NCBI GenBank assembly: GCA_977016875.1
Contig: CDRNST010000031.1
Coordinates: forward strand, 186,001 to 250,000
Length of the DNA: 64,000 nucleotides
Source of the DNA: Pavona decussata
Lineage: Eukaryota
Reading direction: 5' to 3'
Below, piece after piece: positions 1 to 16,747 of this stretch (positions are counted from its first letter, which is position 1; every line of letters starts with the position of its first letter). The notes under the pieces were generated by a model. It was given only the letters and a program-made list of their open reading frames with translations. It was not told where the DNA came from and made no database searches. Position numbers and translations under genes: made by a program.

Positions 1-3000
1 ACTGCTTCACGTTGTCTTCTGGGGACTTCTCCGGTTCGTCGCTAAATAGTGTTTGTATCTACAGAAAGGAACTGGCGTTAGTTTTGAATTTCTAATAGGA
101 ATTATTTGACTCTCTACATTGTGGGATAAGAACTAAAATTGAAGGTAAGTGCAAATCGATCATAAAAGCACTGAATAATACTTTACTACAAGCGACAGTT
201 CATTCTTTTTTCATGTTTCTATTTTGTTCGCTCGCAACTAATGATTCATGAGCAAATGACTGTTTTCATTCAATAGAGTTTTGTAAAGTTTGCCGCGTTA
301 TGTTAGCTAAACTGGACTTAAATTCGATATTAAACATGTTAATTTCATCTAAAGTTGCCGTGAACAGGATCCTCACTGCTTTCAGCGCAAAATGTAAATG
401 CTCATATAACTTCGCGACCAACTAAAAAATTTAATATATGGCTTAAGAATCTTGAGAACTCGTGAGAACGTCATGTACGGTAAATAACGGGACCCTCTTT
501 CGTTTGTTTCTGTTGTTTACAGACAAATTTTGTATTTGACTGTATTGTGACAGTGCCGGATCACCAAATGGAATGCTTTCATGACCACTTGACTAAAAAT
601 GGATTACTTGCCTCGCAGTCAACAGAGCTCTAAGCCTACTACAAACTGAAACCGCTCATATAGTTACAGACTTACAGTTAGGTACGGTGAAACAGGCTTA
701 AAACGCAGCTAAAAGCTCGGGATTTTATTAACTTTACCACGACATAGACTAATATAATTTATTTTACGTGCACGGCTTGGAATTCATCAAAATTTGCTGG
801 CGCAAAATCAGTACATTGGCGGATCAAATTTTTGTGGGTAAAATACACAAATTTGACGATAATTGTCTCGTTTAGATCAAAACCTTAAAAGGTCCTAGTC
901 TTATTGCACACGCAAAAATACAAGATTTTTATTGTAAAATACACCTACAATAACAATTATTTTCTTCCTTCGTGTGGTCATTGAGTAATACCGATACGTT
1001 CGCGTGTCTGTAGCCTGACAAGCTAGGATAATTTTGGTGTTTAACGTTACCTTTCTCTTTGGCAAACTAAAGCCTTAAAAGATGGGTGAAAACGAAGAAA
1101 ATTTCAACCTACGCTAACAAACAATTCAAGTCATTAAGGTACCAGAGATCTGTGTTTATATCTCAGGGTACATATCATATCTCTGCAGCACTTTCGTCGT
1201 TTATAATCAGATGCTACTGATATGCAGCCGGTATGGCTTCGTCCCAATTTCGTAAAATTATCAAGTAAATGGTTTTCGGATATCACCAGAGCGGTGCCAT
1301 GAAAAAACACCTTTCCTGTAGTTCCAAAAAGAACGACAGCTTCCTTTTAAAAGCATAATAAGAAGAAATACTTTTCTCAACATTTTTGCTTCGCTAAAAA
1401 TTTTACTTTTGTATATCCAAGTCGCGTTACACTCGCGAGTGTTCTAAGGTTTCATAGTTATTGCTAACAATCATTGAATTTCTTGATTATATCTGGTGAT
1501 AAACACTTTGGACATCTGTTTCGACTTCCGACGTTAATGGTTTTATAATTTGATAGATCACCTCCGTCGGCCTGATTTTCTTGTTTTAATTTTTGAATGA
1601 ATTTCTTCCATGCAGTTAAACTGACAACTTAATTATTGCCCGGGGGTATGCCGCCTTCTACGTTACAATAATTTTTATATTCCTGCATAACTTTAATCAT
1701 TACTGTAGCCTTCTATGCCTGCTTTTCGCGAAAGGAGGAGCGCTGACAATGGAAGAACAAGAACCGCCTGATCATATCTGACCGTTGCTAAAGATGCGTA
1801 TTCTTGACGCTAAAGCTCTGTCCTTTTCCACAAGTCAGAGTAGACTATTAGCAATCCCTTATTTTTCTAAGGGATAGTAAAGCAAACCGATCCACGCGAG
1901 CCCTAGTGATAATTGCCTCCCAAGAGCCGGGACGCACGGTTAGTACAGAGATTTTTCTGCAATCAGCCTATTCACAGATCTTCTATTTTCTTAGAATTTT
2001 GAGGAGCGAGCAAGGGCGAAATAAAAACCGTGGGAGAATTAATGTATGTACGACGGCGGATGCAGACTCGCCCACTCTCTCAGGACAACGTTGACAACCA
2101 GAGATACTAGATCCAGCTTAGTGTGCCAGGGCTCCTGTGAAGGTTTTCTGCTGCTCCCGCGTTCCTTCCCGCTTCCCAGATTTTTCCTTGAAAAAAGATC
2201 TCGCTACTTTTGGTTCCTTCTCCGTTGTCTGTCCACAGGTCACTTAAGTCCCGCCTCCCTTGGGGCCTCCCTCTTAATGCATAACTGTCCTGCGTTTTCG
2301 TACAAAGACTGTTTTCACTTGCGAGATAAACATAAGCCGAAAAGGAATATTTACACTTCGTGATGACCGCAAGCGCATAGCAAAATGAAAGTTCTTCATC
2401 GTGGCTTGGTTTTGAGGATGAAGTTTCAGGTGGGCTTTTAATCTCACACTGATAACACCCTTATTCTATGCGTGATAAACAGGCTAATTGCCAGTGGAAT
2501 CCAGTAGATAATCAGAACTGGAGTTGGTTTCTGTCGTCCCAATAGCACATAAATAAATTGTACTTGAAGGTTCTTTTGTCCGATCTCTCGTGAGTAAATG
2601 AACAAAAGTGATAACAAGTTAAGCGTAACAACAAAAAGGTCAAATCTATTAGACGATCGCTAGTACAGCTAGTCTTATTCATAACCAGGACTAATATCGG
2701 CTGCCATAGACACTTTAAGGACTGTGGCTCCCTTTACTACTGTGCATGCGTTCTGCGCATCTCGGGATGGTCCGCGAAACTCGGTGCCTACCAATTCAAT
2801 TCAATTCAATCCAATAAAATAGAAGGTATTTTTGCGCGGTTCACGACTATGTTGGAAAAATCTTAAAAGAAAATGGAGGCATAACTACGCATGTTCAAAG
2901 AAAATTAAGCTCCAATTTGAACAAACATGTCATACATTCATATATATATTAAGGCTTTCTGGAATAATTGTTGCTTAATTATGTCTCGAATATTCAGAAA

Positions 3001-3224
3001 GCTGCAGATGGTCACGCTAGGAGCATGCAAGCAGTGCACGCGGTCCGGTTTTATAGATATTTAACCTGAGACAGCTAAAATAGTTTAATTTTAAAGTGGT
3101 TTTCTCTGGTGAAATAGGTCACTGACTGCTTCTCGTTCGCCACAGCTATTAATACCGATAATCACTTACCCTTGGACTTTTAAGAGTAGCTTATGCAGCT
3201 TATCTCCGAGCATTTATCCACCCA

Positions 3225-3526
3225 ACCATGAGAGTATACACAAAGACAAGACCACAAAACCAGGAACTACGTCCCTTACTCTTTGCGAACAGTGAGTGGG
3301 TCCTTTAACTTCCCACAGAGTTATTTACAAACGAGGGTTGTGAGACGGGATCTATGGTTTATCGTCCTTATCCGAGAAGACTAGAAAGTCTAACCATTTG
3401 CAGATGTCAGAGCAAAGGCAGCACATTCTCCTCAGTTATTTAAAGACCTTGAGTGGTGGTCCGGCCGCGGTTTGAACCCGCGACCTCCCGCACGGTAGTC
3501 CGGTACTCTACCAACTGAACTAACCG
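3225..3526 (-). mobile_element. tRNA-derived SINE
   Basis: The minus strand begins CGGTTAGTTCAGTTGGTAGAG (A box) and continues to GGTTCAAACC (B box), followed by about 230 bp of non-tRNA body. No complete cloverleaf or acceptor stem. The 3' boundary is approximate. Confidence 0.85.
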
Positions 3527-3895
3527 ATCTTCGGTTATAGCCAGGGCTGAGCTCTGTTTGCTGGGTCACGAATGAATCTGAAACCGTTATTATGCCATAT
3601 TATGGCCACGCGAGTGGCCGTTTATTCAAAAAGAACTAAATCAAATTACATAAATTCTCGAAAAACCCTTATCTACTTCTAGCCAAGGTGAGGGCAAAAC
3701 CACCTCAAAGAAACTAGGCCTATTTGTCCCCGCAGTCTATCTAACTGTTATGGGAGAGGCTCGGTTGGGAAAAAAAACCTTTACTGTACCGAAAAAGAAA
3801 AAGAGGACCTTAGTTTGCCGCGTATACATGGTTACCATGGGATCATGTTTACTTTGCGTGTAAGGTTAAGCAGTAATGATTATCTTTATTCCAGG

Positions 3896-6800
3896 ATGGG
3901 CACATGGATTGCCAAACTTGCGGGCCACGAAGATGACGCAGAGAAAGTGCTCAAAGACCCACATTCCATTGTGGCCTACGTCCTTGTGTTTGGTTTGGCA
4001 TTTCTTGTTCTTCTACTGTTTGCTGCTATTTTTGTTGTGACCGCAATCAGAGTTTATAAGAAGTACAGGAAACAAGACAAAAATCTGAAGGTAAGAGCGA
4101 CAGATATATTGAGAGTGAATAAATGTCGAATTTGCGTGGGTTGAGGGAGGGAGTTGCTGTATTTAGGCAGGATGGCCCAGTACTAACAGGTAATCAATCG
4201 TTTCAATCAACCGGTAATGGTTTTTCGTACAAACTCGCGTCCAATGTGTTTGTTAATCTTGCAAAATTTTCACCATTTTACCAGTTTCATAAACGTTAAA
4301 AATCGAAATTTTTGTTAACAAACACCTTGCAATCAAACCAGTTTTCTGGTGCGTTACAATCACACAAGGTAGACATTTCATCATAGGAGTTCTGTTCATT
4401 CGCACGCATTTAGAACCTACTTTTTCCAACTTCAGCTTTAAGACACAAACGTTAACTTCTTGTTGTTTTAAATGATTGTCAGCAGCAAGGAATGCCAACA
4501 AAGTAACGTTGACGAGTTTTGGTATTTCCTGTACTTGTTTTATTTTCCACAGACCACGCTGGACCTTCAAGTGGGAATGAAGGTTTTCAATAATCTCCGG
4601 CGTCGCATAAGTAGCGGTTACGGTTTGCAGAGAGAGGAGTTGCAGATGGTAGAGTTGACTACCACTCCTGGACCAGGTTTGTAAATTTAACAGATACTCA
4701 CATACTGTCCATTTTTTAGGGGCTCGCTGCATTCGCATAAACTCTCTAAAAGGGGTCATCAAATTATGTTTTTTGTTGGTAAAAGTTTCGCGGCGATAGT
4801 CGAAAGGTCATGTTAAGGACAAGAAAAGAACCCAAGACTTCCAGTCTAAAAGTATATACAAAGAATTTTCTCGTCAAATGCGTGATAGAACGTAAGCAAA
4901 ACATTTTCGGCTGGAATGGGGTGTAGCCCTTCTCTTCATTTCTGTTATATCAGCAAAGATAGTACCTTCAGCTAAACTTTATAAAAATTTGTACCAAATT
5001 TACAAGGATTGGCATATATAACAGAGACTTTTGATCATTTCCGGCGACCAATGTCTCCCAAAGATTATCCCAGTATCTTGGACTATTTTCGATTTCCCTC
5101 AAACGCCTGCACTTTAAAGCTCATAAAATTTTGAGAACGTTCAAAACAAGGTCCCAGTAGTAAAACTCACTCTACCAGAGTAGCACTGTTAAAAAAGAAA
5201 ATGTCGCTCTTTTTCTTCCTTTAATTGCTCAATGTAATGATCTGATCAAATCGTTCTCCCCTGAATTTTCTAGCTTCACAAGTACTCCGATCTTCAAAGC
5301 TGGGAATCAAGCTTGCAGGCGGTGAAGGATCCAACCATCTTCCTGGTGATCCAGGGATATTTATAGTGAATGTCAGGCCCGGAGGTTTAGCCGATGGAAA
5401 ACTTTACCCTGGAGATAGAATAGTAGCGGTTTGTAAAATTATTTCTAGCAAACCTGTTTTTAGTCATTTCCATCTTAGACAATTTCATTGAGATTTGATA
5501 TCAAGCTCTTGAATTTCCTGCAGATTAATAATTTTCAAATGAGTAAGGTCTCTCTGAAGTATGCCAAGGAGGTGATGCAAGCTCTGAAACAAGCAGAAGG
5601 GCATCTAACGTTTTACATAAAGAGAGCTCCACTAAGAGAGGTAATTGAAGTAAAAAGTAAAGGTTCCAACAGATCACTGAGTGTCCGCCTTGACTTTTAA
5701 CTTCCAAAGTTCTCCTTAACTTTATAATTACAGAGCAAAACAGGCTGAGCAGAATTGGATTCGCTCTGACAAACGGTTAACGCTCGATACACCAGCACTC
5801 GCATCTCTTTACGGCGATGCATCACCACTAACAGTACAAAAACTCCCTTATCTAGAAATTAAAATAAGCCTGGTACAGAAGCTTGGGTGAACTGGGAAGT
5901 TCTGAAAAGGGAATTATTTTAGACCTTTGTACGGTTTAAGCATTTCACTTCGTGTGATTTGATTACACTCAGGCCCCGCCGCCCCGGGTCATTGAACGAG
6001 GCGAGAAAAGCTAATTGAACGTAAACAAAATATTAACAAAATGGAGGCCACTTTGGAATAACGTTTACAGGAGGGACATAACTAGGAACTTAACATATTC
6101 GTCTGCTCGAATTGCATTCAATTGCCTTAAAGATGTGAAAATGTCTGGTATCTTTTAGCAAAGAGTAAATGAAGCATTTTCATTGTACTGCGATGACGTA
6201 GACACAGGAAAGAAGGAAGTAGTGTTCAGTAAAGAACACATGGAAGGTATGTAAACGATTACCGTAAAATTACAAAAAGTACAGCAAACTTAGGTACACG
6301 TTAATCTTATTTCTGTATGTGAGAAGTGCTTCACAACTGAGCAAGCAGTTCCCCTCATAAAAAGGAGTTGGGTTTTAATCACACCTAGTACAGAGGAATC
6401 TTATGCATAATCTCCAGTGCGAGTGATGAGATGATAGCTGAAAGTCTCTGATCCGCTAGTGTTATGATCCGCAAACCTTGAACGTTCGCTTCACAATCAT
6501 AGCATACAGTAGGCACATATGTACATAGGGACACTGATGGTTCATGTATAGCTGTCGATAGGTTTGATAGGCTTCAACTTTTAAGTTGAATTTAAAAATT
6601 CAGATGTGGAGCTAGCTTTATTGAACACTAGGAACTGTTTTCTGAAGAGAGAAATGTAAACAATAGAGAGATTCAGTCGCATTTACTATAAACGGCAAAC
6701 ATCCATGAGATTCGCGTTGAACTCTATGTTTTCTTGAAAATTTGTGTATAAAGACGGAGAATAGTGTAAACTAATTCTGGGTTTTGATACTAACGCCAGC

Positions 6801-8874
6801 TGACCAGTCAATTTTTCTAAGAAACTGAAAACATCGCGGAGCGGCAAATGTAGAGTAAACGGTCACGACGCCGAAATTCTACTGTCTCTTTATTGTCTTT
6901 TTTGCAGTATTCGAAGAAGCGTTCTCGGTATTTGACGTCCGCGCCTCGGGCAAGATACCAATGAAGCAGTTTTTCCCGTTGCTTAGAACTTTGGGATACA
7001 ACATTCACAAAGAGGAGGCTTTTGACTACATGAATGAGCTGGAGTTAGCAGGTACTTGTCCAGTGGTATCATATATACTATATCATATATCATATTATAT
7101 ACTAATAACTCTTGAATAAATTAATATGCAGTTGATCAAGTTTATTTCAACTTGTCTTGATTTGTGCAAAAACTCATTATAACTCGTCACTGATGTAATT
7201 TTGTAAATAGTTTAGTTTTTGTGTTTTTGCAATACTGTATGTATTTACGGTATGCAAAACAGTACCCTTCAAAACAATTTGAAATGTATAGTAGTTCATC
7301 GTTGGTGGGCTAAAAGTTATTGTAGAAAGTTTTAGAAACTCTTGAATCATGTTTCGCTGAGTTTCTTTTTCTGAGTTCCTTTTTCTTGTCGAAAGTAATT
7401 TCGCGTTTGCTTTGGTTTTGCTTTACTAAATTATATGATTGGTTGGAAAAGTTCCCGCCGTTTTCTCAACCAATGGGAAGCCAAACCCAAACAATCGTGT
7501 TTAGTCGGGCGCGTTTTCCCGCACTTGACGCAGGTTACATGTATTTGCTTCGAGTTCTTATTGGCTGATTGTGCTGGCGGTTTACATCTGTTGTGATTGG
7601 CCAGGGAAATTGCTTCGGGTTTTGGTTTTACAACACTCAATTGAAAACCGTTCTACTGTTTTAGACAAAGCAAAATTCACCTTCAACGAGTTGATCAAGT
7701 TTCTGGAGCACGTGGTAGCAGAACAAGCAGGAAAGATTGAAGTCCAATGCGCGTATAACGTGTTCGATACAGAACAGAGAGGTCACGTGCGGGTGAGTGA
7801 CCTAGATGAGGCGCTAGAGAGAATGTACAAAAAGAAACTTGCCCCCGAGGAATTACAAGAATTACTGTCTCTGGCCGATCTGGACAATGACGGAATTATT
7901 AAGGAAGAAGGTGAGTAATGAGTTAACTGTCGGGCCACGTCGGCGCCTTTATGGCCGAGTGATGCAAAGCCCTGCTCAAACTAAGCCAACCCCCAAATCA
8001 GTGATTGCCGCTAGTAAACAAATTAATACAGCCAAAGAGCATTTCAGAACCAGTTTTTCAACTACTGCTTCCTTCCGCAACTTTGTTACTGAGCACATGT
8101 TTCACCTTTTGCAGAATCACTTTGACATATTCTACCCCTGTACCTGGTCAATTGTACGATCCTTCCCCTGCTATCCCTAGCTTTTTAGCGTCTTTTAAAT
8201 TTGGCGTCTTTTGGTTGATCGTGTTTTAATTATTACTTGTATCATGGGAGGTGCCTCGCATGGGTCCTCGCGTCCCGTTCGCACCTGCCCTTTTGACCTT
8301 ATCACTTTAAATCACTTTGCACATATTTTTCATTTCTTTCTGGCTGTTTAATTTACTGTATTTAACATGTGTGATTAAAAAAAAAAAAAGAACCAGAAGG
8401 GGCCAGAAATATCTATTTAATTATATGAATAACTCTTGTTTCAGTACTGAGACCTTGAGACAAGAGTTATTCGTACAATTATCACTTTAACATTCCAATG
8501 CTAAGAATAAGAATTCACAGTATTATTTTCTACTTGTTTTTTGTCGAAGTTGAATTTTTTCATTGCATTTGTAAGCAAAATAGACAAAGGGTGGGATAGC
8601 CCACTTTAGGTCTGATCCCCTAAAAGTAGAAGGAAGTTCTTTCAGCCTCCTTTTCGTTCAACTATTCACAAAAAAGGGACAAAAGAAAACTTTATTGTTC
8701 TGTAACAGGGCCAGCGGTCTCCTCCAAACCTGAATGATAAGCTTTCAGTGCTTATAACAAAAGGACTTATCTTTTCTCAGATTTTCTCAGAAATTGATGA
8801 TCTAGTATTCCCTTTTCTTTGCTTCTTGGTTAGATTTTGAAAGACTACTCCTTCCTTCATTGATGCTGTACTAG
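3896..8874 (+). CDS. Single-pass membrane protein with a PDZ domain and a C-terminal calmodulin-like (4 EF-hand) domain, 369 aa
   Basis: Exons 3896-4090, 4553-4676, 5274-5428, 5524-5640, 6159-6246, 6908-7051, 7665-7910, 8834-8874. All introns are GT-AG with consistent phases (0,1,0,0,1,1,1), giving 1110 nt open. TM segment IVAYVLVFGLAFLVLLLFAAIFVVTAI followed by YKKYRK. PDZ: KLGIKLAGGEGSNHLPGDPGIFIVNVRPGGLADGKLYPGDRIVAIN. CaM-like: FEEAFSVFDVRASGKI...LLRTLGYN, AYNVFDTEQRGHV, LADLDNDGIIKEEDF. Confidence 0.88.
5759..5815 (+). repeat. Degenerate copy of a minimal hammerhead-type (Penelope-associated) repeat, intronic
   Basis: ATTCGCTCTGACAAACGGTTAACGCTCGATACACCAGC resembles the CTGACGA-stem-CGAAAC hammerhead core layout, but both catalytic boxes are mutated. 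Confidence 0.5.
7385..7656. repeat. Dispersed ~270-bp repeat family (MITE-like)
   Basis: Motifs GATTGG, TTTTCCCGC(G/A)CTT and CAACACTCAA recur in related copies at about 10130-10230 (reverse), 21240-21560 and 46190-46430. Confidence 0.7.
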
Positions 8875-8879
8875 GCGCT

Positions 8880-9510
8880 CACAAATCTACAGGCAGCTGG
8901 TCTCGCTTTGTGTCTCACAACGCGAGTCCATGAGCAGCCGGTAAATACAGCCACATCTGCCTTCATCATCAGCATTGGTTGGAGCCTAAACACTCGTAGG
9001 TCATTGCCTAGCACTGGACAATGCATAGATGGAACTCTACCACTTGCTACGGTTACAGTGGCGAAAATCGTGAGCTTTGCTGAGATAGAATTTGCGCTTT
9101 GCCTTAATAATTAGCTGTGCAACTTTCGTGCTTCGCTGCTGATATTTTATTCGGTGCCCTTGAACGTAAGCTTTTTGCCTCTCACGTCATGATCTTGGAT
9201 TTAATACATGATGTCAGATCCACGGCTTGTTAGAAGGATGCATGCGGACAATTCTCAGTGGCATAGCGTCATCCAAGATATTGGTGCGAATAAGGTTAGT
9301 TCCGGATCCTTTCTCGTTCGGCGACCTCTGAGAGGTATACTTCCTCCCATTCCTCAAGATGAAGTGGACATTTTCTAATTCTTGTCTCATCACTCGGACT
9401 TTTCGGGGCACAGCGGCGATCCTTTGCCTGATTATGGATGTTAATATCAGACACGAGCGACCAATGAGCGAAAGATGCTAAACGTCTTTGTATAGCTCCG
9501 ATATATTGTT
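8880..9510 (-). mobile_element. Decayed non-LTR retrotransposon fragment (endonuclease-RT linker, CR1/L2-group-like)
   Basis: Minus-strand frames read MPLRIVRMHPSNKPWI...RQKAYVQGHRIKYQQRSTKVAQLIIKAKRKFY...SKW, the typical linker pattern (P-x-K...KPW...RQxA...AKxxY) of LINE ORF2, with stop codons in frame. Confidence 0.7.
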
Positions 9511-12374
9511 CCAAATTAAGTTATTATGTACATAGTGATGGTAATATTCATATAATTAGTTCTTTTAGAGCATTCAATTTTAACCTTTGAACGTATTTTT
9601 TAGTCTTTTATTATTAAGGAAATTGTAAAAAAAAAAACTATAATAGGCCCTTAACTTACAACCTCCTCGTAATGTGCGGGACACAGAAATTTAAGTAAGA
9701 AAATGAGCAAGCTATATTCAGCCCCCACGCAGACGCCCTTTGGGCTTGTCATGCATTCCTCCCTTGCGTGGGGGAGGAATGCAAGCTATTAGGAATAATG
9801 CAGGGACCAGTTGAAAGGATCGAACGTTCGAGAAGCTGTTCCTTGAGAGGAATTGAACTCCCATGTCTCAAATCACGAGAGGGTATTCAATTCTCATATT
9901 AATTTCAAGCGGCTACAATGAACTTTTAGAATTGAGAACAAATCGCTGAGGGACTTAAGATGGGTCGGACTGATCCTCCTTGGCTAGAGGCTTTGTAGTT
10001 TATATTGATATCTAAAGAAAATATATTTTGTGTAACTGTTTGTTAAATCCGCCACTTTGTAGATTTATAAGAAAAGAGTTTAGCATATTGCAAACAGCTG
10101 AATAGATGAGTTTACAACACAGCGTCATAAAACAGCCTGAACAAAAGCAAATAACAACACGATTAATTAACCACTCAAAAATCAAAGCCAACAATGAGTA
10201 AACGGCATCAAGCGCGGAAAAGCGAACTCGTGCGCAACTTAACAGCCGCGGTTTCAATGAGCAATCTTTTGCTTGCGCAAACGATGCTATTTTTCTAGTT
10301 GCGTCCTCAACACGAGAGAAAAATTGCACGTGTAGCCACTGTTGCGCATGTGCAGGTGATACGACAAACCCGCGCCTTGTCGCAAAAGGTAAACTCGTCA
10401 ACTTTATTTCTTGCTGTCGCACTTTACTTGCGAGGAATTGGCTTTACGTGCAACTTTTGCCTCGCGTTCGAAACGCAGCAATTTTTTAAAATATCTTGTC
10501 GCCTGTGCAAGCAAGAAAACTGCTCATGCAGCCCTATAGCCGCAACTTTCGACAGAGAATAAGGTGAAACCAAAGAAAACGTGGATTTCGATCTACACTC
10601 AAATGAAAAGCGCTCTAAAAATTAGAATATAAATTACTTTGGTTTGAGGTTTAACCAAGTTACATGAAAAAAATGTAAATTTAAACGTTTTGTAGGATGT
10701 TAATTTGCTAGCCTTGAAAATTGTAAGGACATATTTAGTTAAAAATTAAATCTGTTCTCTGGCTTAATGTTTTGTATTCCTTATTTAGACAAAATAAAAT
10801 TATGAAAGAAATTAAAAGATTACACTAAAAAGCACCATGATTATTCACTTGTATGTTACTCAGTAACCGACACAAAAGCAAATATGTTTTATCGAAGCTG
10901 AAGTTTAGCACAAAACCCCGATATTGCGATACATGTCCGTTCCTATTCATAGAGCTTTTATAAATTTCTTCGTAAATATTTCTTCATTATATAATCCAGT
11001 GGGCTGACAGTGCGTTTAAATTCTCTAAAATAGCGCGCAGGGTTGGTGCGCATAGTATCACATATAATTTGGCCGGCTTTAACTTAACAAATTGTAGGAT
11101 GCCAAACTTCGGACTACACTAAAAGACGTTCAAACAAGACCATAACTGAAATTTACAACTTTTCTGTTACAGACGTTGTTTGCATATAAAGATTTGTGAA
11201 GCATGGGCCGGGCCAGGCTGGCGCAATTCTTAAAACCACCCGGAGAATTTGACAACTACAATGACAGGACATACAGCCCGGGTGTCGGGGAAGGGGATAC
11301 TCCCTTAGTTTTAAATTCATACTACGTAGGGATTTGCCGCCTCAAGGGAAGTCGCTTATAAGCTGATCACGTGACCTGTGACGTGATCAAGGCAAAAGAA
11401 GACACCAAATTTTACAGGCAGGAAAAATTTTTATGCTGTATCGAGGATCATTTATATTTTCCAAATAAACTTCAAACGCATGCAGTCTTTAAACTGCTTG
11501 AAATTATTTAGATATTTGAAGAAACCTGGCCGTGAATTAAATTCAGGAATAAAATGTTCACAAACGGGGCGGACTTCTACGGACAAAACACCCACAAATT
11601 TTGTCGATTATCTGACATTTTAAATGCTCTTCGAACTAAAATGAGACAGCGTAACAATTGAGGGGGAAAACAAATAGACATCTCGACTCATTCTGTGTGG
11701 CAACCTTCCGTTATTTGTCTCGGAAAAATACCCCAAATTATTCGTTCACAATTTGAATTCAATTGTATTTTGTCTTCTGTTAATTTGATGTCTCTTTGAA
11801 GTTTACTGTCGCGTCAATCAATTTTAACTACTTCTCGCTAAATCCTTTGTAACCAACTAAAGTAATTGTTTCTTTTAATAAGCAAGTCCTTCAATAGAAG
11901 AATTTTTAACCAATAAAGTTTCACTTGAGTTCCACCTGCCGTGTATATATGAAAGGAAACTTAAAAAGACCAGTAAATTGCAAAATGAACTGCGTTGCGT
12001 TTGGACAACCGCAAATTATAGATTGGTGAGGTTGCTCTTTCATGAATGCCGAAAACAAATATTGTTAGATAACCTATTCTACCTAGAGTTTATGGCAATT
12101 GTCCATGAAAATAAGTGGGAGTTTCAATTTCTGGCTGTGATGTGTTTAAGGTGTCGAAAATTGCCAGGCAGGTGAACTTGAAATGTGAGTGTATAAATCT
12201 ACTGAGTCGGCACTCAATGATCTTCAAAGCCGGCCGAAGCCATAACCTCTGAGCCGTGAGTAAATAAATTCAGTGACATTATTTAAGTAACAAGGCCTGA
12301 CAAGGATGTGAGTCAGCTAGAGGCTGTTGAAAACCTGTCGTTTTGAATTGCTGTATTAATACGTTCTCAAGAAA

Positions 12375-13931
12375 ATGAGTTCCAAGGTAACATGTTTCTG
12401 TGTTTCTTTAATTTTCAGTTACGTTACGTTTACATACAGATGCTTAAGTATATATTTTCCTTGATATAAACTTACCTTTTTGAAGGCCTTCAGCAAGTAA
12501 GAAACTTACCTGATTATATATTCCATCGTTACCTTAACAGCGGGAAAACAATTTCCCCTTTATACCAAAACATAGTGACAAATAGCATAGAATGAAATTT
12601 ATTATTTCTTGTGAGGGTAAAAATTCATATTTTCACTGATCATTAACACATAATCTGACCATGTATGTCTGGTACCCAATGCGATTATGAAGTAAAAAAC
12701 AAACATGAATTGTATCAAACAATCACAAAATTGGTTCTCAGCAACAGTTCCAATTCATCTCTTCGAAAACTGTTTATTTTTCACATTTATTTTCTCGTTC
12801 AGTTTTTGTTTAAATTTAACGAAAGTAAAACTCGCTTAAAAGGGAGAATTAATGGAACTGCTTACAAAAATTTGACTGGTTGTTTACAAACCGCTAAACC
12901 GCAAATATTGTCTTTCTCTTTGGCAGGAAACCACTGAAATGAGTTTTTTGAAAATTAAAGCAGTGCGTCTGGATTGTAAAGAACACTCTCGGCAAGCCGA
13001 CGAGAATGGTAACCTTGCCAACCAGGAGGATTTCTCTTGTTTCACAGATGATGGGAACGAAAGTAGAGAGCAGCAAAGAAAACTTAAACTATTGAGCGGC
13101 GAAAAGTTTTGGCGGGTTCCAAAGCAAGTTCAATTGCACGTCGAAAACAAGCCAACGAATATGTCGCCAAAAGCAACGAGTTCGAAAACAAGTTTACCTT
13201 CTTTTCCTAAGCTAGTAAGGTCATTAAAGAAAGATGACAACAAGATAGATTTCGGGGAAAATGGAACACAAACGGAGAAAAGGCGTTCAAGTTCGGCGCC
13301 GGGAAGTTCTAGATCTTACCCGCAAGCTAGAATAAGGAAACACAAAATTCGACTTCCGAATATCCCTGATCTGCGATCGTTGTCAATAATTGAAAAGCAG
13401 CCTATGAAGAGTTTTGTGGTGGAAGGAAAAAAGCTTGGATCGGCAGGTGATCTTAGTGAATTTTCTTCTCCAGATTCAAACGATAACGACAATGGTTTTA
13501 CAAACAGCGAGTCAAAAGTTATCGATGAAAATCCCAGCAAAACCCAAACAAAGAAAATGATAAGCGCAGAAAACACTAATGGCAAGAACGAATACGGGAA
13601 GGAACGTTGCTATGGAGACGCATGCGAAGACTTGTGTCCGTCAATCAGGAAAACTGAATTTCGTGTGAAGACAGCTTACGCTAACTCCAGCAGAAAGTTT
13701 AACACTTACCTGCAATCAAGATTCGGAAAAAGCGTTTATGAAGGCATCCACAAAAAGATAGGCACGGACCCAGGTAAAAAATATCAAGTTTATTGGGCAC
13801 CTGTGCTGATAAACAAGAAGGTCCTATATAACCGCTCTGATGCTGCGGTTAGAACGCAGGAAAACTGCGAAGATGCACGCCCAACCAAAGAGGGAAAAGT
13901 TAACTATGGAAGGGTGAAAGCCTCAGCGTGA
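12375..13931 (+). CDS. Uncharacterised basic low-complexity protein (cluster gene 1), about 334 aa
   Basis: 330-aa ORF at 12939-13931. A 12-nt micro-exon ATGAGTTCCAAG|gtaaca (12375-12386) splices in frame to the acceptor tttggcag|GAA at 12927, giving MSSK-ETTEMSFLK. Motifs RSSSAP and IRLPNI. Confidence 0.7.
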
Positions 13932-15955: not shown

Positions 15956-16747
15956 TCACGGTAACACCGCGCCAGAACTTGCCGCCCTCAAACGAAATCG
16001 CGTTTCAGCAAGGCTAATGGACGACTTGCACTTCTCCTTTTTGTAGAGTTCTTGCCTTCCAACCATCAAAGAGGTGTGAATGTTCCACGAGTCCTGTTTG
16101 GCGGGAATTGAGCGTGAAGGCTCTGATGCACGGCGCATGGTTTCCCGCCACAAATCTTGTCTATATATTGGTGGAAGTTGCTGCGAGCGAGCGGCGTTTT
16201 CCCGGCAACTATAATCGTCGTCTTCTTGAACACGAAGAGGAAAAACCTGTAAAATCTCGTCAACCTTGTTGTCTGGAGAGCTCTCTCTACGAGAAACAAG
16301 GTCCTTCTCAGAATCGTCAAAATCTGAGCTAGGAGGCCTCCTTCCATTGTAAGTTTCTTGAAGCGTTGGTTTCCCTGATGAGCGCGGAATCCAGTATTGT
16401 GATGTTGAATCGCGGCAAAAATCTCGTGGGAATTCCAATCCTTTTTCGTCCGGCTTAAAAGGCACAAGCCTTGAAACAGGAACACAAAGAGAAACTCGCG
16501 GCTTTCTTAGCTCTTCTTGCTTTTTTAGTGTTTCTTCGAGGACTTGTTTTGGTTTCTTTCGTGTTTTTTGTAAAACATTTTTCTCCTCTGTCGAGGTGTC
16601 ATCGCTTGAACCTTCATTGTCAGCTGCAGCAGCCGGCAAATCGTCGATGTTGATATTTCGTTCCTTCACTTCTCTGATGGCGTCTTCATAAAGTTTTTGC
16701 GTTCTTTTCTCGCTCCGGGAAGGCTTAGGCTTCCTTCTCCTACCCAT
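15956..16747 (-). CDS. Uncharacterised basic protein (cluster gene 2), 263 aa
   Basis: Single ORF starting at ATG, with a putative 5'UTR intron at 16759-16932 (cag|gtaagt ... cctag|). Motifs QLPPIY, RRASEP, RRESSP. Confidence 0.72.
   Translation of the reverse strand: MGRRRKPKPSRSEKRTQKLYEDAIREVKERNINIDDLPAAAADNEGSSDDTSTEEKNVLQKTRKKPKQVLEETLKKQEELRKPRVSLCVPVSRLVPFKPDEKGLEFPRDFCRDSTSQYWIPRSSGKPTLQETYNGRRPPSSDFDDSEKDLVSRRESSPDNKVDEILQVFPLRVQEDDDYSCRENAARSQQLPPIYRQDLWRETMRRASEPSRSIPAKQDSWNIHTSLMVGRQELYKKEKCKSSISLAETRFRLRAASSGAVLP

What the first reader, a model, noticed from the sequence alone, without database searches (positions are those of the whole stretch)
3896..8874. Unusual TM-PDZ-calmodulin fusion protein hidden across 8 exons
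Seen: a short N-terminus without a signal peptide, one TM helix followed by a basic patch, a DLG-PDZ-like domain (GG-x-G-x-x-H-L-PGD-x-x-IF), then a whole calmodulin/myosin-light-chain-like domain. Only EF4 (DLDNDGIIKEED) and perhaps EF3 (DTEQRGHVRVSD) look Ca2+-competent. Established: the positive-inside rule puts the PDZ and EF-hands in the cytosol. I do not know a characterised protein with this architecture. Inference: a membrane-anchored Ca2+-sensing adaptor, e.g. for channels or transporters with PDZ-binding tails. The ORF track shows only fragments of it.
Basis: partly seen in the sequence, partly recalled or inferred. Interest (0 to 1): 0.75.

Follow-up and report, generated by a model that had tools for sequence, protein, structure and literature searches.

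The report
Coral membrane-anchored PDZ–calmodulin-like fusion gene
This is a real eight-exon stony-coral gene for a membrane-anchored protein that joins a PDZ docking domain to a largely calcium-blind calmodulin-like domain; other stony corals have it too, but nobody has studied it.

Summary
Eight exons (3896-8874, + strand) all have AG/GT borders, keep one frame and give 369 codons. In order they encode a short acidic N-terminus, one very hydrophobic helix, a basic patch, one DLG-type PDZ domain and a complete four-EF-hand calmodulin-like domain.

Indirect support for one gene is strong:
- cDNA-like contigs from other corals align to the window exon by exon and cross the critical 5640|6159 junction.
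- A congener's genomic locus keeps all eight exons gap-free (91-98% identity, dN/dS 0.26), while its introns carry indels.
- Full-length orthologs with the same domain order occur in Acropora, Montipora, Porites, Orbicella, Oculina and Stylophora. All are labelled "uncharacterized protein" or auto-named "Calmodulin".

Outside corals I found one relative, a PDZ+EF protein without a membrane helix from a marine metatranscriptome.

EF1 and EF2 are dead and EF3 is weak. Only EF4 is canonical, with an invariant Asp at loop position 12. The PDZ has Leu where class I domains have His.

Most likely it is a signal-anchored cytosolic adaptor rather than a true Ca2+ sensor. It is a new variant of known kinds, of moderate interest.

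The parts
3896..4090 (+). Coding exon 1 (65 aa): start codon, conserved N-terminus MGxWxAKLAGH, hydrophobic helix (residues 25-51, nt 3968-4048) and basic stop-transfer patch RVYKKYRKQDKNLK
   Evidence: hydropathy, flank charges -3/+6. 95% identity and no gaps in congener L008. Orthologs start at the same MG. An acceptor-like site at 3894|3895 hints at an upstream non-coding exon.
4553..4676 (+). Exon 2 (41 codons + 1 nt): juxtamembrane TTLDLQV motif, basic amphipathic helix KVFNNLRRRIS (an RRxS kinase-type site) and linker MVELTTTPGP
   Evidence: cDNA contigs L009, L014 and L015 end their match at 4676. AF2 of the Montipora ortholog predicts a helix here at low confidence.
5274..5428 (+). Exon 3: N-terminal half of the PDZ domain, with carboxylate-binding loop K-L-G-I and GGEGSNHLPGDPGIF
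   Evidence: Pfam PDZ 2.3e-7, 31.5 bits against cut-off 23.2. Best PDB matches PSD-95 PDZ1/2, E 5e-14.
5524..5640 (+). Exon 4: C-terminal half of the PDZ domain (alphaB helix VSLKYAKEVMQAL with Leu at alphaB1, last strand LTFYIKRA). Reading through the donor at 5640 would give a TM-PDZ-only product ending at 5700
   Evidence: Ortholog alignment to PSD-95 PDZ1 residues 70-150. Donor 5640 is the end of the match in L009 and L015; L014 reads on into the intron. ORF 5488..5700.
6159..6246 (+). Exon 5: most conserved exon (QRVNEAFSLYCDDVDTGKKEVVFSKEHME). It links the PDZ directly to the first EF-hand helix
   Evidence: 98% nt and 100% aa identity to the congener. 97% aa identity to P0153. L009 joins it to exon 4.
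6908..7051 (+). Exon 6: EF1 (loop DVRASGKIPMKQ, non-binding) and the entering helix of EF2. Skipped in frame in Montipora foliosa isoform X2
   Evidence: Pfam EF-hand_6/7 below cut-off on its own. Loop table. P0158 lacks it.
7665..7910 (+). Exon 7: rest of EF2 (degenerate), EF3 (DTEQRGHVRVSD, 7766-7801) and most of EF4 (DLDNDGIIKEE, 7877-7909)
   Evidence: Pfam EF-hand_8 1.3e-9 and EF-hand_7 1.8e-8, both above cut-off. PDB centrin and calmodulin about 1e-10. L015 matches 7663-7910.
8834..8874 (+). Exon 8: last residue of the EF4 loop (Asp, split codon), exiting helix and invariant C-terminal tail FERLLLPSLMLY, then stop
   Evidence: The tail ...PSLxLY is identical in all corals and P..LY is kept in the distant relative P0102. 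L015 joins 7910 to 8834.

Best explanation
This is one single-copy stony-coral gene with eight coding exons. It encodes a 369-residue type III (N-out, C-in) signal-anchored membrane protein.

Layout of the protein:
- About 25 residues of conserved N-terminus face the lumen or the outside.
- One helix crosses the membrane.
- Everything after it sits on the cytosolic face: a basic amphipathic juxtamembrane helix with an RRxS site, one PDZ domain, and, joined to it without a flexible linker, a four-EF-hand calmodulin-like domain. The protein ends in an invariant PSLxLY tail.

Proposed mechanism (inferred, not shown): it is a membrane-tethered adaptor. The PDZ groove has an intact K-L-G-I carboxylate loop and Leu at alphaB1, hence probably hydrophobic, class II-like tails. 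It would hold the C-terminus of a membrane or cortical partner. The EF domain would behave more like a myosin light chain than like calmodulin: it grips an amphipathic helix, either of a partner or its own juxtamembrane helix. It has at most one divalent-cation site (EF4, Asp at position 12), which would tune or stabilise the domain rather than switch it.

My confidence differs by layer. That the gene and its architecture are real: about 0.93. Cytosolic orientation: about 0.75. The adaptor mechanism: about 0.5.
For: Gene structure:
- AG/GT at every border and an intact frame.
- The orthologous cDNA-like contig L009 (1941 nt, uninterrupted 373-aa CDS) aligns to the window in blocks that end exactly at donors 4676, 5640, 6246 and 7051 and restart within 2 nt of each acceptor.
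- L015 does the same and also covers 7910|8834.
- In congener locus L008 all eight exons have identical length, no gaps, kept splice sites and 91-98% identity. Its introns are 80-92% identical with 1-10 gap openings each. dN/dS is 0.26.
- L011, a relative about 50% identical, has the same eight exons in the same order.
- The gene is single-copy in its own genome.

Architecture:
- Pfam PDZ and EF-hand pair on the exons and on the orthologs.
- The PDB's closest sequences are PSD-95 PDZ1 for the PDZ and calmodulin residues 7-146 for the EF domain.
- Orthologs exist in Montipora, Acropora, Porites, Orbicella, Oculina and Stylophora.

Topology:
- Hydrophobic stretch with Kyte-Doolittle mean 3.17 and flank charges -3/+6, read with the positive-inside rule (established knowledge).
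- A plant precedent for a signal-anchored calmodulin-like protein with the CaM domain facing the cytosol: AtCML4/5 (PMC4915527).

EF-hand state: loop table over 12 sequences.

Transcription of the locus: RNA-labelled coral runs hold 6-10% of the sampled words of the 5.3-kb stretch, against 73-86% in the likely DNA runs. This is weak and not resolved by position.
Against:
- The window's own full-length protein, or a congener's, is not in the 5.8-billion-protein collection.
- Both AF2 models have low confidence (mean pLDDT 60.5 and 58.7, pTM 0.33 and 0.39). Nothing structural supports a PDZ-EF unit, tail docking or helix capture.
- The invariant Gly2 with Ala/Thr at position 6 and Lys at 7 resembles an N-myristoylation signal. 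That would need a cytosolic N-terminus and conflicts with the N-out model.
- One cDNA contig (L014) stops being spliced after exon 4, so a TM-PDZ-only product may exist.
- No partner, localisation or expression pattern is known.
Confidence: 0.6

Rival explanations
1. There are two separate genes: a TM-PDZ gene (exons 1-4) and a calmodulin-like gene (exons 5-8). They happen to lie head to tail in compatible frames, and the junction 5640|6159 is not used in this species.
For: A cDNA-like contig of another coral (L014) carries exons 1-4 spliced and then runs into intron 4, giving a 211-aa TM-PDZ product. No same-species reads could be laid.
Against: - Sister contig L015 from the same project is 98.5% identical up to the exon 4 end and is spliced on to exon 5. 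L009 is too.
- RefSeq and GenBank models in at least six genera join the two parts.
- Exon 5 has no start codon context of its own. It is the best conserved exon and abuts the PDZ in every ortholog.
- The distant relative P0102 also has PDZ and EF domains on one 1482-nt transcript.
Confidence: 0.04
2. Same gene, different anchoring. The N-terminal Gly is myristoylated and the hydrophobic stretch is a hairpin or monotopic anchor, so both ends are cytosolic. Alternatively the orientation is reversed, with the PDZ and EF domains lumenal or extracellular in a high-Ca2+ compartment.
For: M-G is invariant in all orthologs, including L011. Small residues follow at position 3, Ala/Thr at 6 and Lys at 7, which resembles N-myristoyltransferase substrates (own knowledge). 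The N-terminal 11 residues are unusually conserved for a short ectodomain.
Against: The hydrophobic run is 27 residues with no central proline, which is short for a hairpin. The charge bias of -3 before and +6 after is the classical N-out/C-in signature and is kept in all orthologs. From own knowledge, PDZ and calmodulin-like domains are nearly always cytosolic.
Confidence: 0.15
3. Same gene, but a real Ca2+ sensor. Ca2+ binding to EF4, and perhaps EF3, switches the calmodulin-like domain and thereby gates PDZ-bound channels or pumps such as a PMCA-type Ca2+-ATPase in calcifying cells.
For: EF4 has ligands at positions 1, 3 and 5 and Gly6 in nearly all orthologs. EF3 keeps positions 1, 3, 6 and 12 in most. 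The family was found only in calcifying stony corals, plus one unknown marine eukaryote.
Against: The N-lobe is dead in all sequences. EF3 has Lys, Arg, Ile or Thr at position 5. EF4 has Asp12 throughout and is degenerate in Stylophora (DEENTGFCREQD). The PDZ lacks the class I His that recognises S/T-x-V tails of the PMCA type. There are no expression data.
Confidence: 0.2

Closest known systems
DLG/PSD-95 family PDZ domains (PDZ1/PDZ2), also Erbin and Scribble PDZ
   Same: Best sequence matches of the PDZ (E 5e-14 for exon 3 alone). They share the AGG-x-G-x-x-H-[IL]-PGD-x-x-I[FY] stretch and the G-Φ-G-Φ loop, and the alignment covers the whole PDZ1, residues 70-150.
   Different: There is a single PDZ, with no SH3 or guanylate-kinase domains. 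It has Leu instead of His at alphaB1, a 3-residue longer alphaB helix and a 2-residue shorter beta3-alphaA loop. It is membrane-anchored by its own helix.
Calmodulin / centrin / myosin light chains (four-EF-hand CTER group)
   Same: The EF region aligns to calmodulin residues 7-146, all four EF-hands, at E about 1e-18. Centrin and calmodulin are the top matches for exon 7.
   Different: Identity is only about 30%. EF1 and EF2 are non-binding and EF3 is impaired. EF4 has Asp12, as in the Ca2+/Mg2+ site of myosin regulatory light chain (own knowledge, not tested). The domain is fused to a PDZ and a membrane helix and has a conserved 6-residue tail after EF4.
AtCML4/AtCML5, plant signal-anchored calmodulin-like proteins (PMC4915527)
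   Same: N-terminal signal anchor, single pass, and a calmodulin-like domain shown experimentally to face the cytosol. This is the same anchoring logic.
   Different: It is a flowering-plant-specific subfamily with no PDZ and typical Ca2+-sensor properties according to the paper. It is an analogy only; homology beyond the EF-hand fold was not tested.
SYNJ2BP/OMP25 (PDZ plus membrane anchor)
   Same: A single DLG-like PDZ tethered to a membrane by one helix. It appears among the PDB matches of exon 3.
   Different: Its anchor is C-terminal (tail anchor; own knowledge) and it has no EF-hands.
P0102, an unnamed 381-aa protein from a marine metatranscriptome (JGI 3300018935)
   Same: The only non-coral relative found. 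It has PDZ and four EF-hands in the same order, EF4 with Asp12, and the C-terminal P..LY tail. It aligns from the PDZ to the end at 31-35% identity.
   Different: It has no hydrophobic helix and a long acidic/Ser-Thr-rich N-terminus. It lacks the conserved exon 5 segment. The organism is unknown.

Membership tests
PDZ domain (Pfam PF00595) | Profile score above the curated cut-off | tested here: met
   Exon 3 alone scores 31.5 bits against 23.2. Orthologs score 30.1 to 56.9 bits.
PDZ domain (Pfam PF00595) | Carboxylate-binding loop (basic residue, then x-Φ-G-Φ) and a full-length domain with an alphaB helix | tested here: met
   The loop reads R-S-S-K-L-G-I-K-L in the window. L-G-I is kept in all corals and I-G-I in P0102. 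The ortholog aligns to PSD-95 PDZ1 residues 70-150. The three-dimensional model was too uncertain to add anything.
Class I (DLG-type) PDZ specificity | His at alphaB1, which binds Ser/Thr at ligand position -2 | tested here: not met
   Leu aligns with the His of PSD-95 PDZ1 (VSLKYA against VTHSAA). Of the aligned corals, all have Leu except P0014, which has Pro; P0102 has Met.
EF-hand pair (Pfam PF13499 / PF13833) | Profile score above the curated cut-off | tested here: met
   Exon 7: EF-hand_8 38.1 bits against 28, EF-hand_7 35.1 bits against 30.
Calmodulin proper | Four Ca2+-competent 12-residue loops (ligands at 1, 3, 5 and 12, Glu12) in a free protein of about 149 aa | tested here: not met
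   EF1 is DVRASGKIPMKQ (Arg3, Gln12). EF2 is irregular. EF3 is DTEQRGHVRVSD (Arg5). EF4 is DLDNDGIIKEED (Asp12). The domain is fused, not free.
MAGUK (DLG/PSD-95) scaffolds | PDZ domains followed by SH3 and guanylate-kinase-like domains | tested here: not met
   Pfam finds only PDZ and EF-hand families in the full-length orthologs.
Signal-anchored (type III) membrane protein | No cleavable signal peptide, one hydrophobic helix near the N-terminus, positive charge on the C-terminal side | tested here: met
   Kyte-Doolittle mean 3.17 over residues 30-48, flank charges -3/+6, conserved in orthologs. The actual topology is not testable with these tools.
Myosin light-chain-like (Ca2+/Mg2+ structural site) | A single functional loop with Asp at position 12, and binding to an IQ or amphipathic helix | not tested
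   The Asp12 pattern is seen in all sequences. The likeness to the regulatory light chain loop is from memory.

The most novel reading that the evidence does not exclude
A gene born in the stony-coral lineage by domain shuffling: a membrane helix, a PDZ and a light-chain-like EF domain. It would act as a dedicated membrane-tethered regulator of a Ca2+-handling membrane protein (pump, exchanger or channel) in calcifying or symbiont-hosting cells. The fused PDZ-EF pair would work as one unit, so that cation binding at EF4, or phosphorylation of the RRxS helix, changes what the PDZ holds.
Probability: 0.12. Interest if true: 0.7.

Novelty: new variant of a known kind. Interest (0 to 1): 0.4.

Why it matters
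PDZ domains and calmodulin-like domains are both very common, yet I found no described protein that fuses them, let alone on a membrane anchor. The fusion is old enough to be shared by both major stony-coral clades. It is single-copy and under purifying selection, and it was not seen in the other animals reached by my searches.

Lineage-restricted genes tied to calcium are natural candidates for coral-specific biology such as calcification or symbiosis, and this one is easy to test. More practically, the case corrects public annotation. Two GenBank models call it 'Calmodulin'. One of them (Stylophora PFX16130) merges it with the neighbouring gene, and the other (Acropora cervicornis) drops part of the PDZ.

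Tried and rejected
- **Joined model.** Exons were searched one by one by reference, and orthologs returned by the tools served as full-length proxies.
- **Word search with P0102.** It found only itself.
- **Profile word search with alignment A1.** It added no new lineage.
- **JGI metagenome scan with A2.** It gave 8 coral loci, none from this species.
- **ESM Atlas.** Only a generic EF-hand cluster at 0.91.
- **AF2.** The full-length Montipora ortholog and the PDZ-EF part both came out at low confidence (pLDDT 60.5 and 58.7, pTM 0.33 and 0.39). I therefore ran no fold search, and made no claim about tail-in-groove or domain packing.
- **Papers.** Five searches, including eleven accession and LOC numbers, found no paper on this family.
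- **UTRs.** The 5' and 3' UTRs of L009 do not align to the window, so the upstream exon stays open.
- **Self-binding of the tail to the PDZ.** I considered this and rank it low. The tail is conserved at positions 0, -1 and -3 but varies at -2 (M, V, I, T, K, E), which is the position a PDZ reads most.
- **Cassette exon.** A cassette like the extra 13-aa repeat of Orbicella and Oculina was not found in intron 1.
- **tRNA genes.** None in 1-12000.


Full report
**What is there.** The window is eukaryotic, about 39% G+C. The sequencing runs that hold it are labelled as a coral or coral metagenome. It lies on contig C31 of a 602-Mb assembly.

On the + strand between 3896 and 8874, eight stretches are bounded by AG and GT and keep one reading frame across their split codons. 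They are 3896-4090, 4553-4676, 5274-5428, 5524-5640, 6159-6246, 6908-7051, 7665-7910 and 8834-8874. Together they make 1110 nt, i.e. 369 codons and a stop.

**Domain content, exon by exon.** All searches used single exons by reference, or full-length orthologs that the tools returned.

- Exon 1 encodes MGTWIAKLAGHEDDAEKVLKDPHS, then a 27-residue hydrophobic run (best 19-residue Kyte-Doolittle mean 3.17), then RVYKKYRKQDKNLK. The flank charges are -3 and +6.
- Exon 3 alone passes the Pfam PDZ cut-off (31.5 against 23.2 bits). Its best PDB matches are PSD-95 PDZ1 and PDZ2 at E 5e-14.
- Exon 7 alone passes EF-hand_7 and EF-hand_8 and matches centrin and calmodulin at about 1e-10.
- The PDZ of an ortholog colinear with exons 3-4 aligns to the whole of PSD-95 PDZ1, residues 70-150.
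- The EF region of that ortholog aligns to calmodulin residues 7-146, that is all four EF-hands.

**Is it one gene?** The direct test, RNA reads across 5640|6159, failed for a technical reason. I kept those letters out of every later search. The indirect evidence is nevertheless strong and comes from independent sources.

1. *Orthologous proteins.* An exhaustive HMMER search with exon 7 found full-length proteins of 346-382 aa. These carry the same N-terminus, helix, PDZ, EF-hands and tail. Follow-up searches and cluster look-ups name them in Montipora capricornis and M. foliosa, Acropora muricata, A. millepora, A. palmata and A. cervicornis. They also occur in Porites lutea, P. lobata, P. harrisoni and P. 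evermanni, in Orbicella faveolata, in Oculina patagonica and in Stylophora pistillata. Each window exon maps to a contiguous block of these proteins, and neighbouring blocks abut.

2. *cDNA-like contigs.* Many of these proteins sit on contigs of 1.3-2.8 kb, too short to hold a 5-kb split gene.
   - L009 is 1941 nt with an uninterrupted 373-aa CDS. It aligns to the window in seven blocks whose ends are the predicted donors 4676, 5640, 6246 and 7051. Their starts lie within 2 nt of the acceptors, and the 5640|6159 junction is contiguous in the contig at 770/771.
   - L015 behaves the same way and also joins 7910 to 8834.

3. *A congener's genomic locus.* L008 is about 87% identical overall. It keeps all eight exons at identical length with no gaps, with AG/GT preserved and 91-98% identity. 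Its introns are 80-92% identical with 1-10 gap openings each. Summed over the in-frame parts of the exons, dS is 0.140, dN is 0.036 and dN/dS is 0.26.

4. *A more distant genome.* L011, about 50% identical at the protein level, has the same eight exons in the same order. They run from MGSWL... to ...DFERLLLPSLTLY.

The gene is single-copy in its own genome. I put the chance that these are two separate genes at about 4%.

One caveat concerns isoforms. Contig L014 is 98.5% identical to L015 up to the last base of exon 4 and then runs on into GTAAT.... It would encode a 211-aa TM-PDZ product. This may be unspliced precursor or a real short isoform. In the window the same read-through would stop at 5700. 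Montipora foliosa isoform X2 skips exon 6 in frame.

**Anatomy in detail.** The most conserved parts are the following:
- the first eleven residues (MGxWxAKLAGH)
- the motif TTLDLQV just after the basic patch
- a basic amphipathic stretch with an RRxS-type site (KVFNNLRRRIS in the window)
- MVEL.TTPGP
- the PDZ core
- exon 5 (QRVNEAFSLYCDD..TGKK.VVF.KEHME), which joins the PDZ to EF1 without any low-complexity linker
- the C-terminal DFERLLLPSLxLY

The PDZ keeps the carboxylate-binding loop (K-L-G-I). Where PSD-95 PDZ1 has the class I histidine it has Leu, and its alphaB helix is three residues longer.

The EF loops are as follows.

| Loop | Window sequence | State |
|---|---|---|
| EF1 | DVRASGKIPMKQ | No acidic residue at position 12 in any coral; non-binding |
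| EF2 | irregular | Basic in all sequences; non-binding |
| EF3 | DTEQRGHVRVSD | Non-ligand residue at position 5 in nearly all sequences (Glu in Acropora muricata); impaired |
| EF4 | DLDNDGIIKEED | Canonical at positions 1, 3, 5 and 6 in all but Stylophora; always Asp, never Glu, at position 12, also in the distant relative P0102 |

From my own knowledge, Asp12 loops favour Mg2+, or bind Ca2+ and Mg2+ as structural sites, as in myosin regulatory light chain. I did not test this.

**How it most likely works.**

- *Shown:* the gene, its exon structure by comparative evidence, the domain order, its conservation, and the state of the binding motifs.
- *Follows from established knowledge:* a single very hydrophobic helix with -3/+6 flanks and no cleavable signal inserts N-out/C-in (positive-inside rule). 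The PDZ and EF domains would therefore be cytosolic. A plant precedent for this kind of anchoring of a calmodulin-like domain has been shown experimentally (AtCML4/5, PMC4915527).
- *Inferred:* the protein is a membrane-tethered adaptor. Its PDZ holds a partner's C-terminal tail, probably hydrophobic at position -2. Its EF domain acts like a light chain that clamps an amphipathic helix, either of a partner or its own juxtamembrane helix. One cation site and possibly phosphorylation modulate it.

An alternative topology, with a myristoylated Gly2 and a hairpin anchor, cannot be excluded (about 0.15). Both AF2 attempts were too uncertain to say anything about packing of the domains or docking of the tail.

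**Comparison with what is known.** The parts belong to the PDZ and EF-hand families; both Pfam cut-offs are met.

- It is not calmodulin proper: three loops are impaired, identity is about 30%, and the domain is fused rather than free.
- It is not a MAGUK: there is no SH3 or GuK domain.
- It is not a class I PDZ: there is no alphaB1 His.
- It works somewhat like signal-anchored CMLs of plants and like PDZ proteins tethered by one helix, such as SYNJ2BP. Neither has this combination.

I found no paper on the family in five literature searches, which included eleven accession and LOC numbers.

Among the best 150 hits of the exhaustive search, only corals and one 381-aa protein (P0102) also carry the PDZ. 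P0102 comes from a marine metatranscriptome and has no membrane helix. The restriction to stony corals is provisional for two reasons. Only the top 150 of 604 hits were listed. The word-based searches also miss relatives below roughly 40% identity.

**Novelty and value.** The gene is already present in public coral proteomes as an unnamed prediction, so it is not a new gene. What is new is recognising a conserved, lineage-restricted TM-PDZ-calmodulin-like architecture, together with the state of its binding sites. I class it as a new variant of known kinds and score interest at 0.4. It is correct, tidy and testable, but built from common modules and so far without a phenotype, a partner or an expression pattern.

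**Limits.**
- There are no same-species RNA reads.
- The joined model was not searched or folded, by rule.
- Places 8364-8406 were kept out of all searches.
- The organisms of L008, L009, L011, L015 and P0102 are not named by the tools.

Noticed in passing
window 3163-3577: An interspersed repeat of about 370 bp lies some 320 bp upstream of the start codon. It gave at least 1611 first-look candidates in the same genome, 40 of them scored at 88-92% identity. It is absent at this place in the congener locus L008, so it is a recent insertion next to the gene's 5' end.
   Followed up: partly
window about 8054-8520 (intron 7): About 470 bases have no counterpart in the congener locus L008, probably another insertion.
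   Followed up: no
window 12939-13931 (+): An intronless 330-aa ORF with no Pfam match lies downstream of the gene. The same neighbour is present in congener L008 (12449-13429) and in Porites contigs L012/L013 (324 aa). In the Stylophora GenBank model PFX16130 ('Calmodulin', 538 aa) it is fused to the EF-hand part. This shows conserved microsynteny and a mis-merged public model.
   Followed up: partly
L014 against L015 (JGI contigs of another coral); window 5641-5700: A transcript form has exons 1-4 spliced but intron 4 retained, giving a TM-PDZ-only product of 211 aa. In the window the same read-through would add 19 residues and stop at 5700.
   Followed up: partly
P0158 (Montipora foliosa isoform X2); window exon 6, 6908-7051: Exon 6 (144 nt, a multiple of three) is skipped in an annotated isoform. 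This removes EF1 and the entering helix of EF2 while keeping the frame.
   Followed up: no
P0187 (Orbicella) and P0152 (Oculina), after the membrane helix: Robust-clade orthologs carry an extra 13-residue copy of the TT(L/F)DLQxGKK motif, so the juxtamembrane motif is duplicated. No such cassette was seen in the window's intron 1.
   Followed up: partly
window 3880-3895: A strong acceptor-like site (ttatctttattccag|G) lies directly before ATG 3896 and is conserved in L008. An in-frame ATG lies at 3845. Orthologs all start at MG, so 3896 is the likely start, but an untranslated upstream exon may exist.
   Followed up: partly
window 15956-16747 (-): A 263-aa ORF rich in Lys, Glu and Ser on the minus strand, with no Pfam match.
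   Followed up: no
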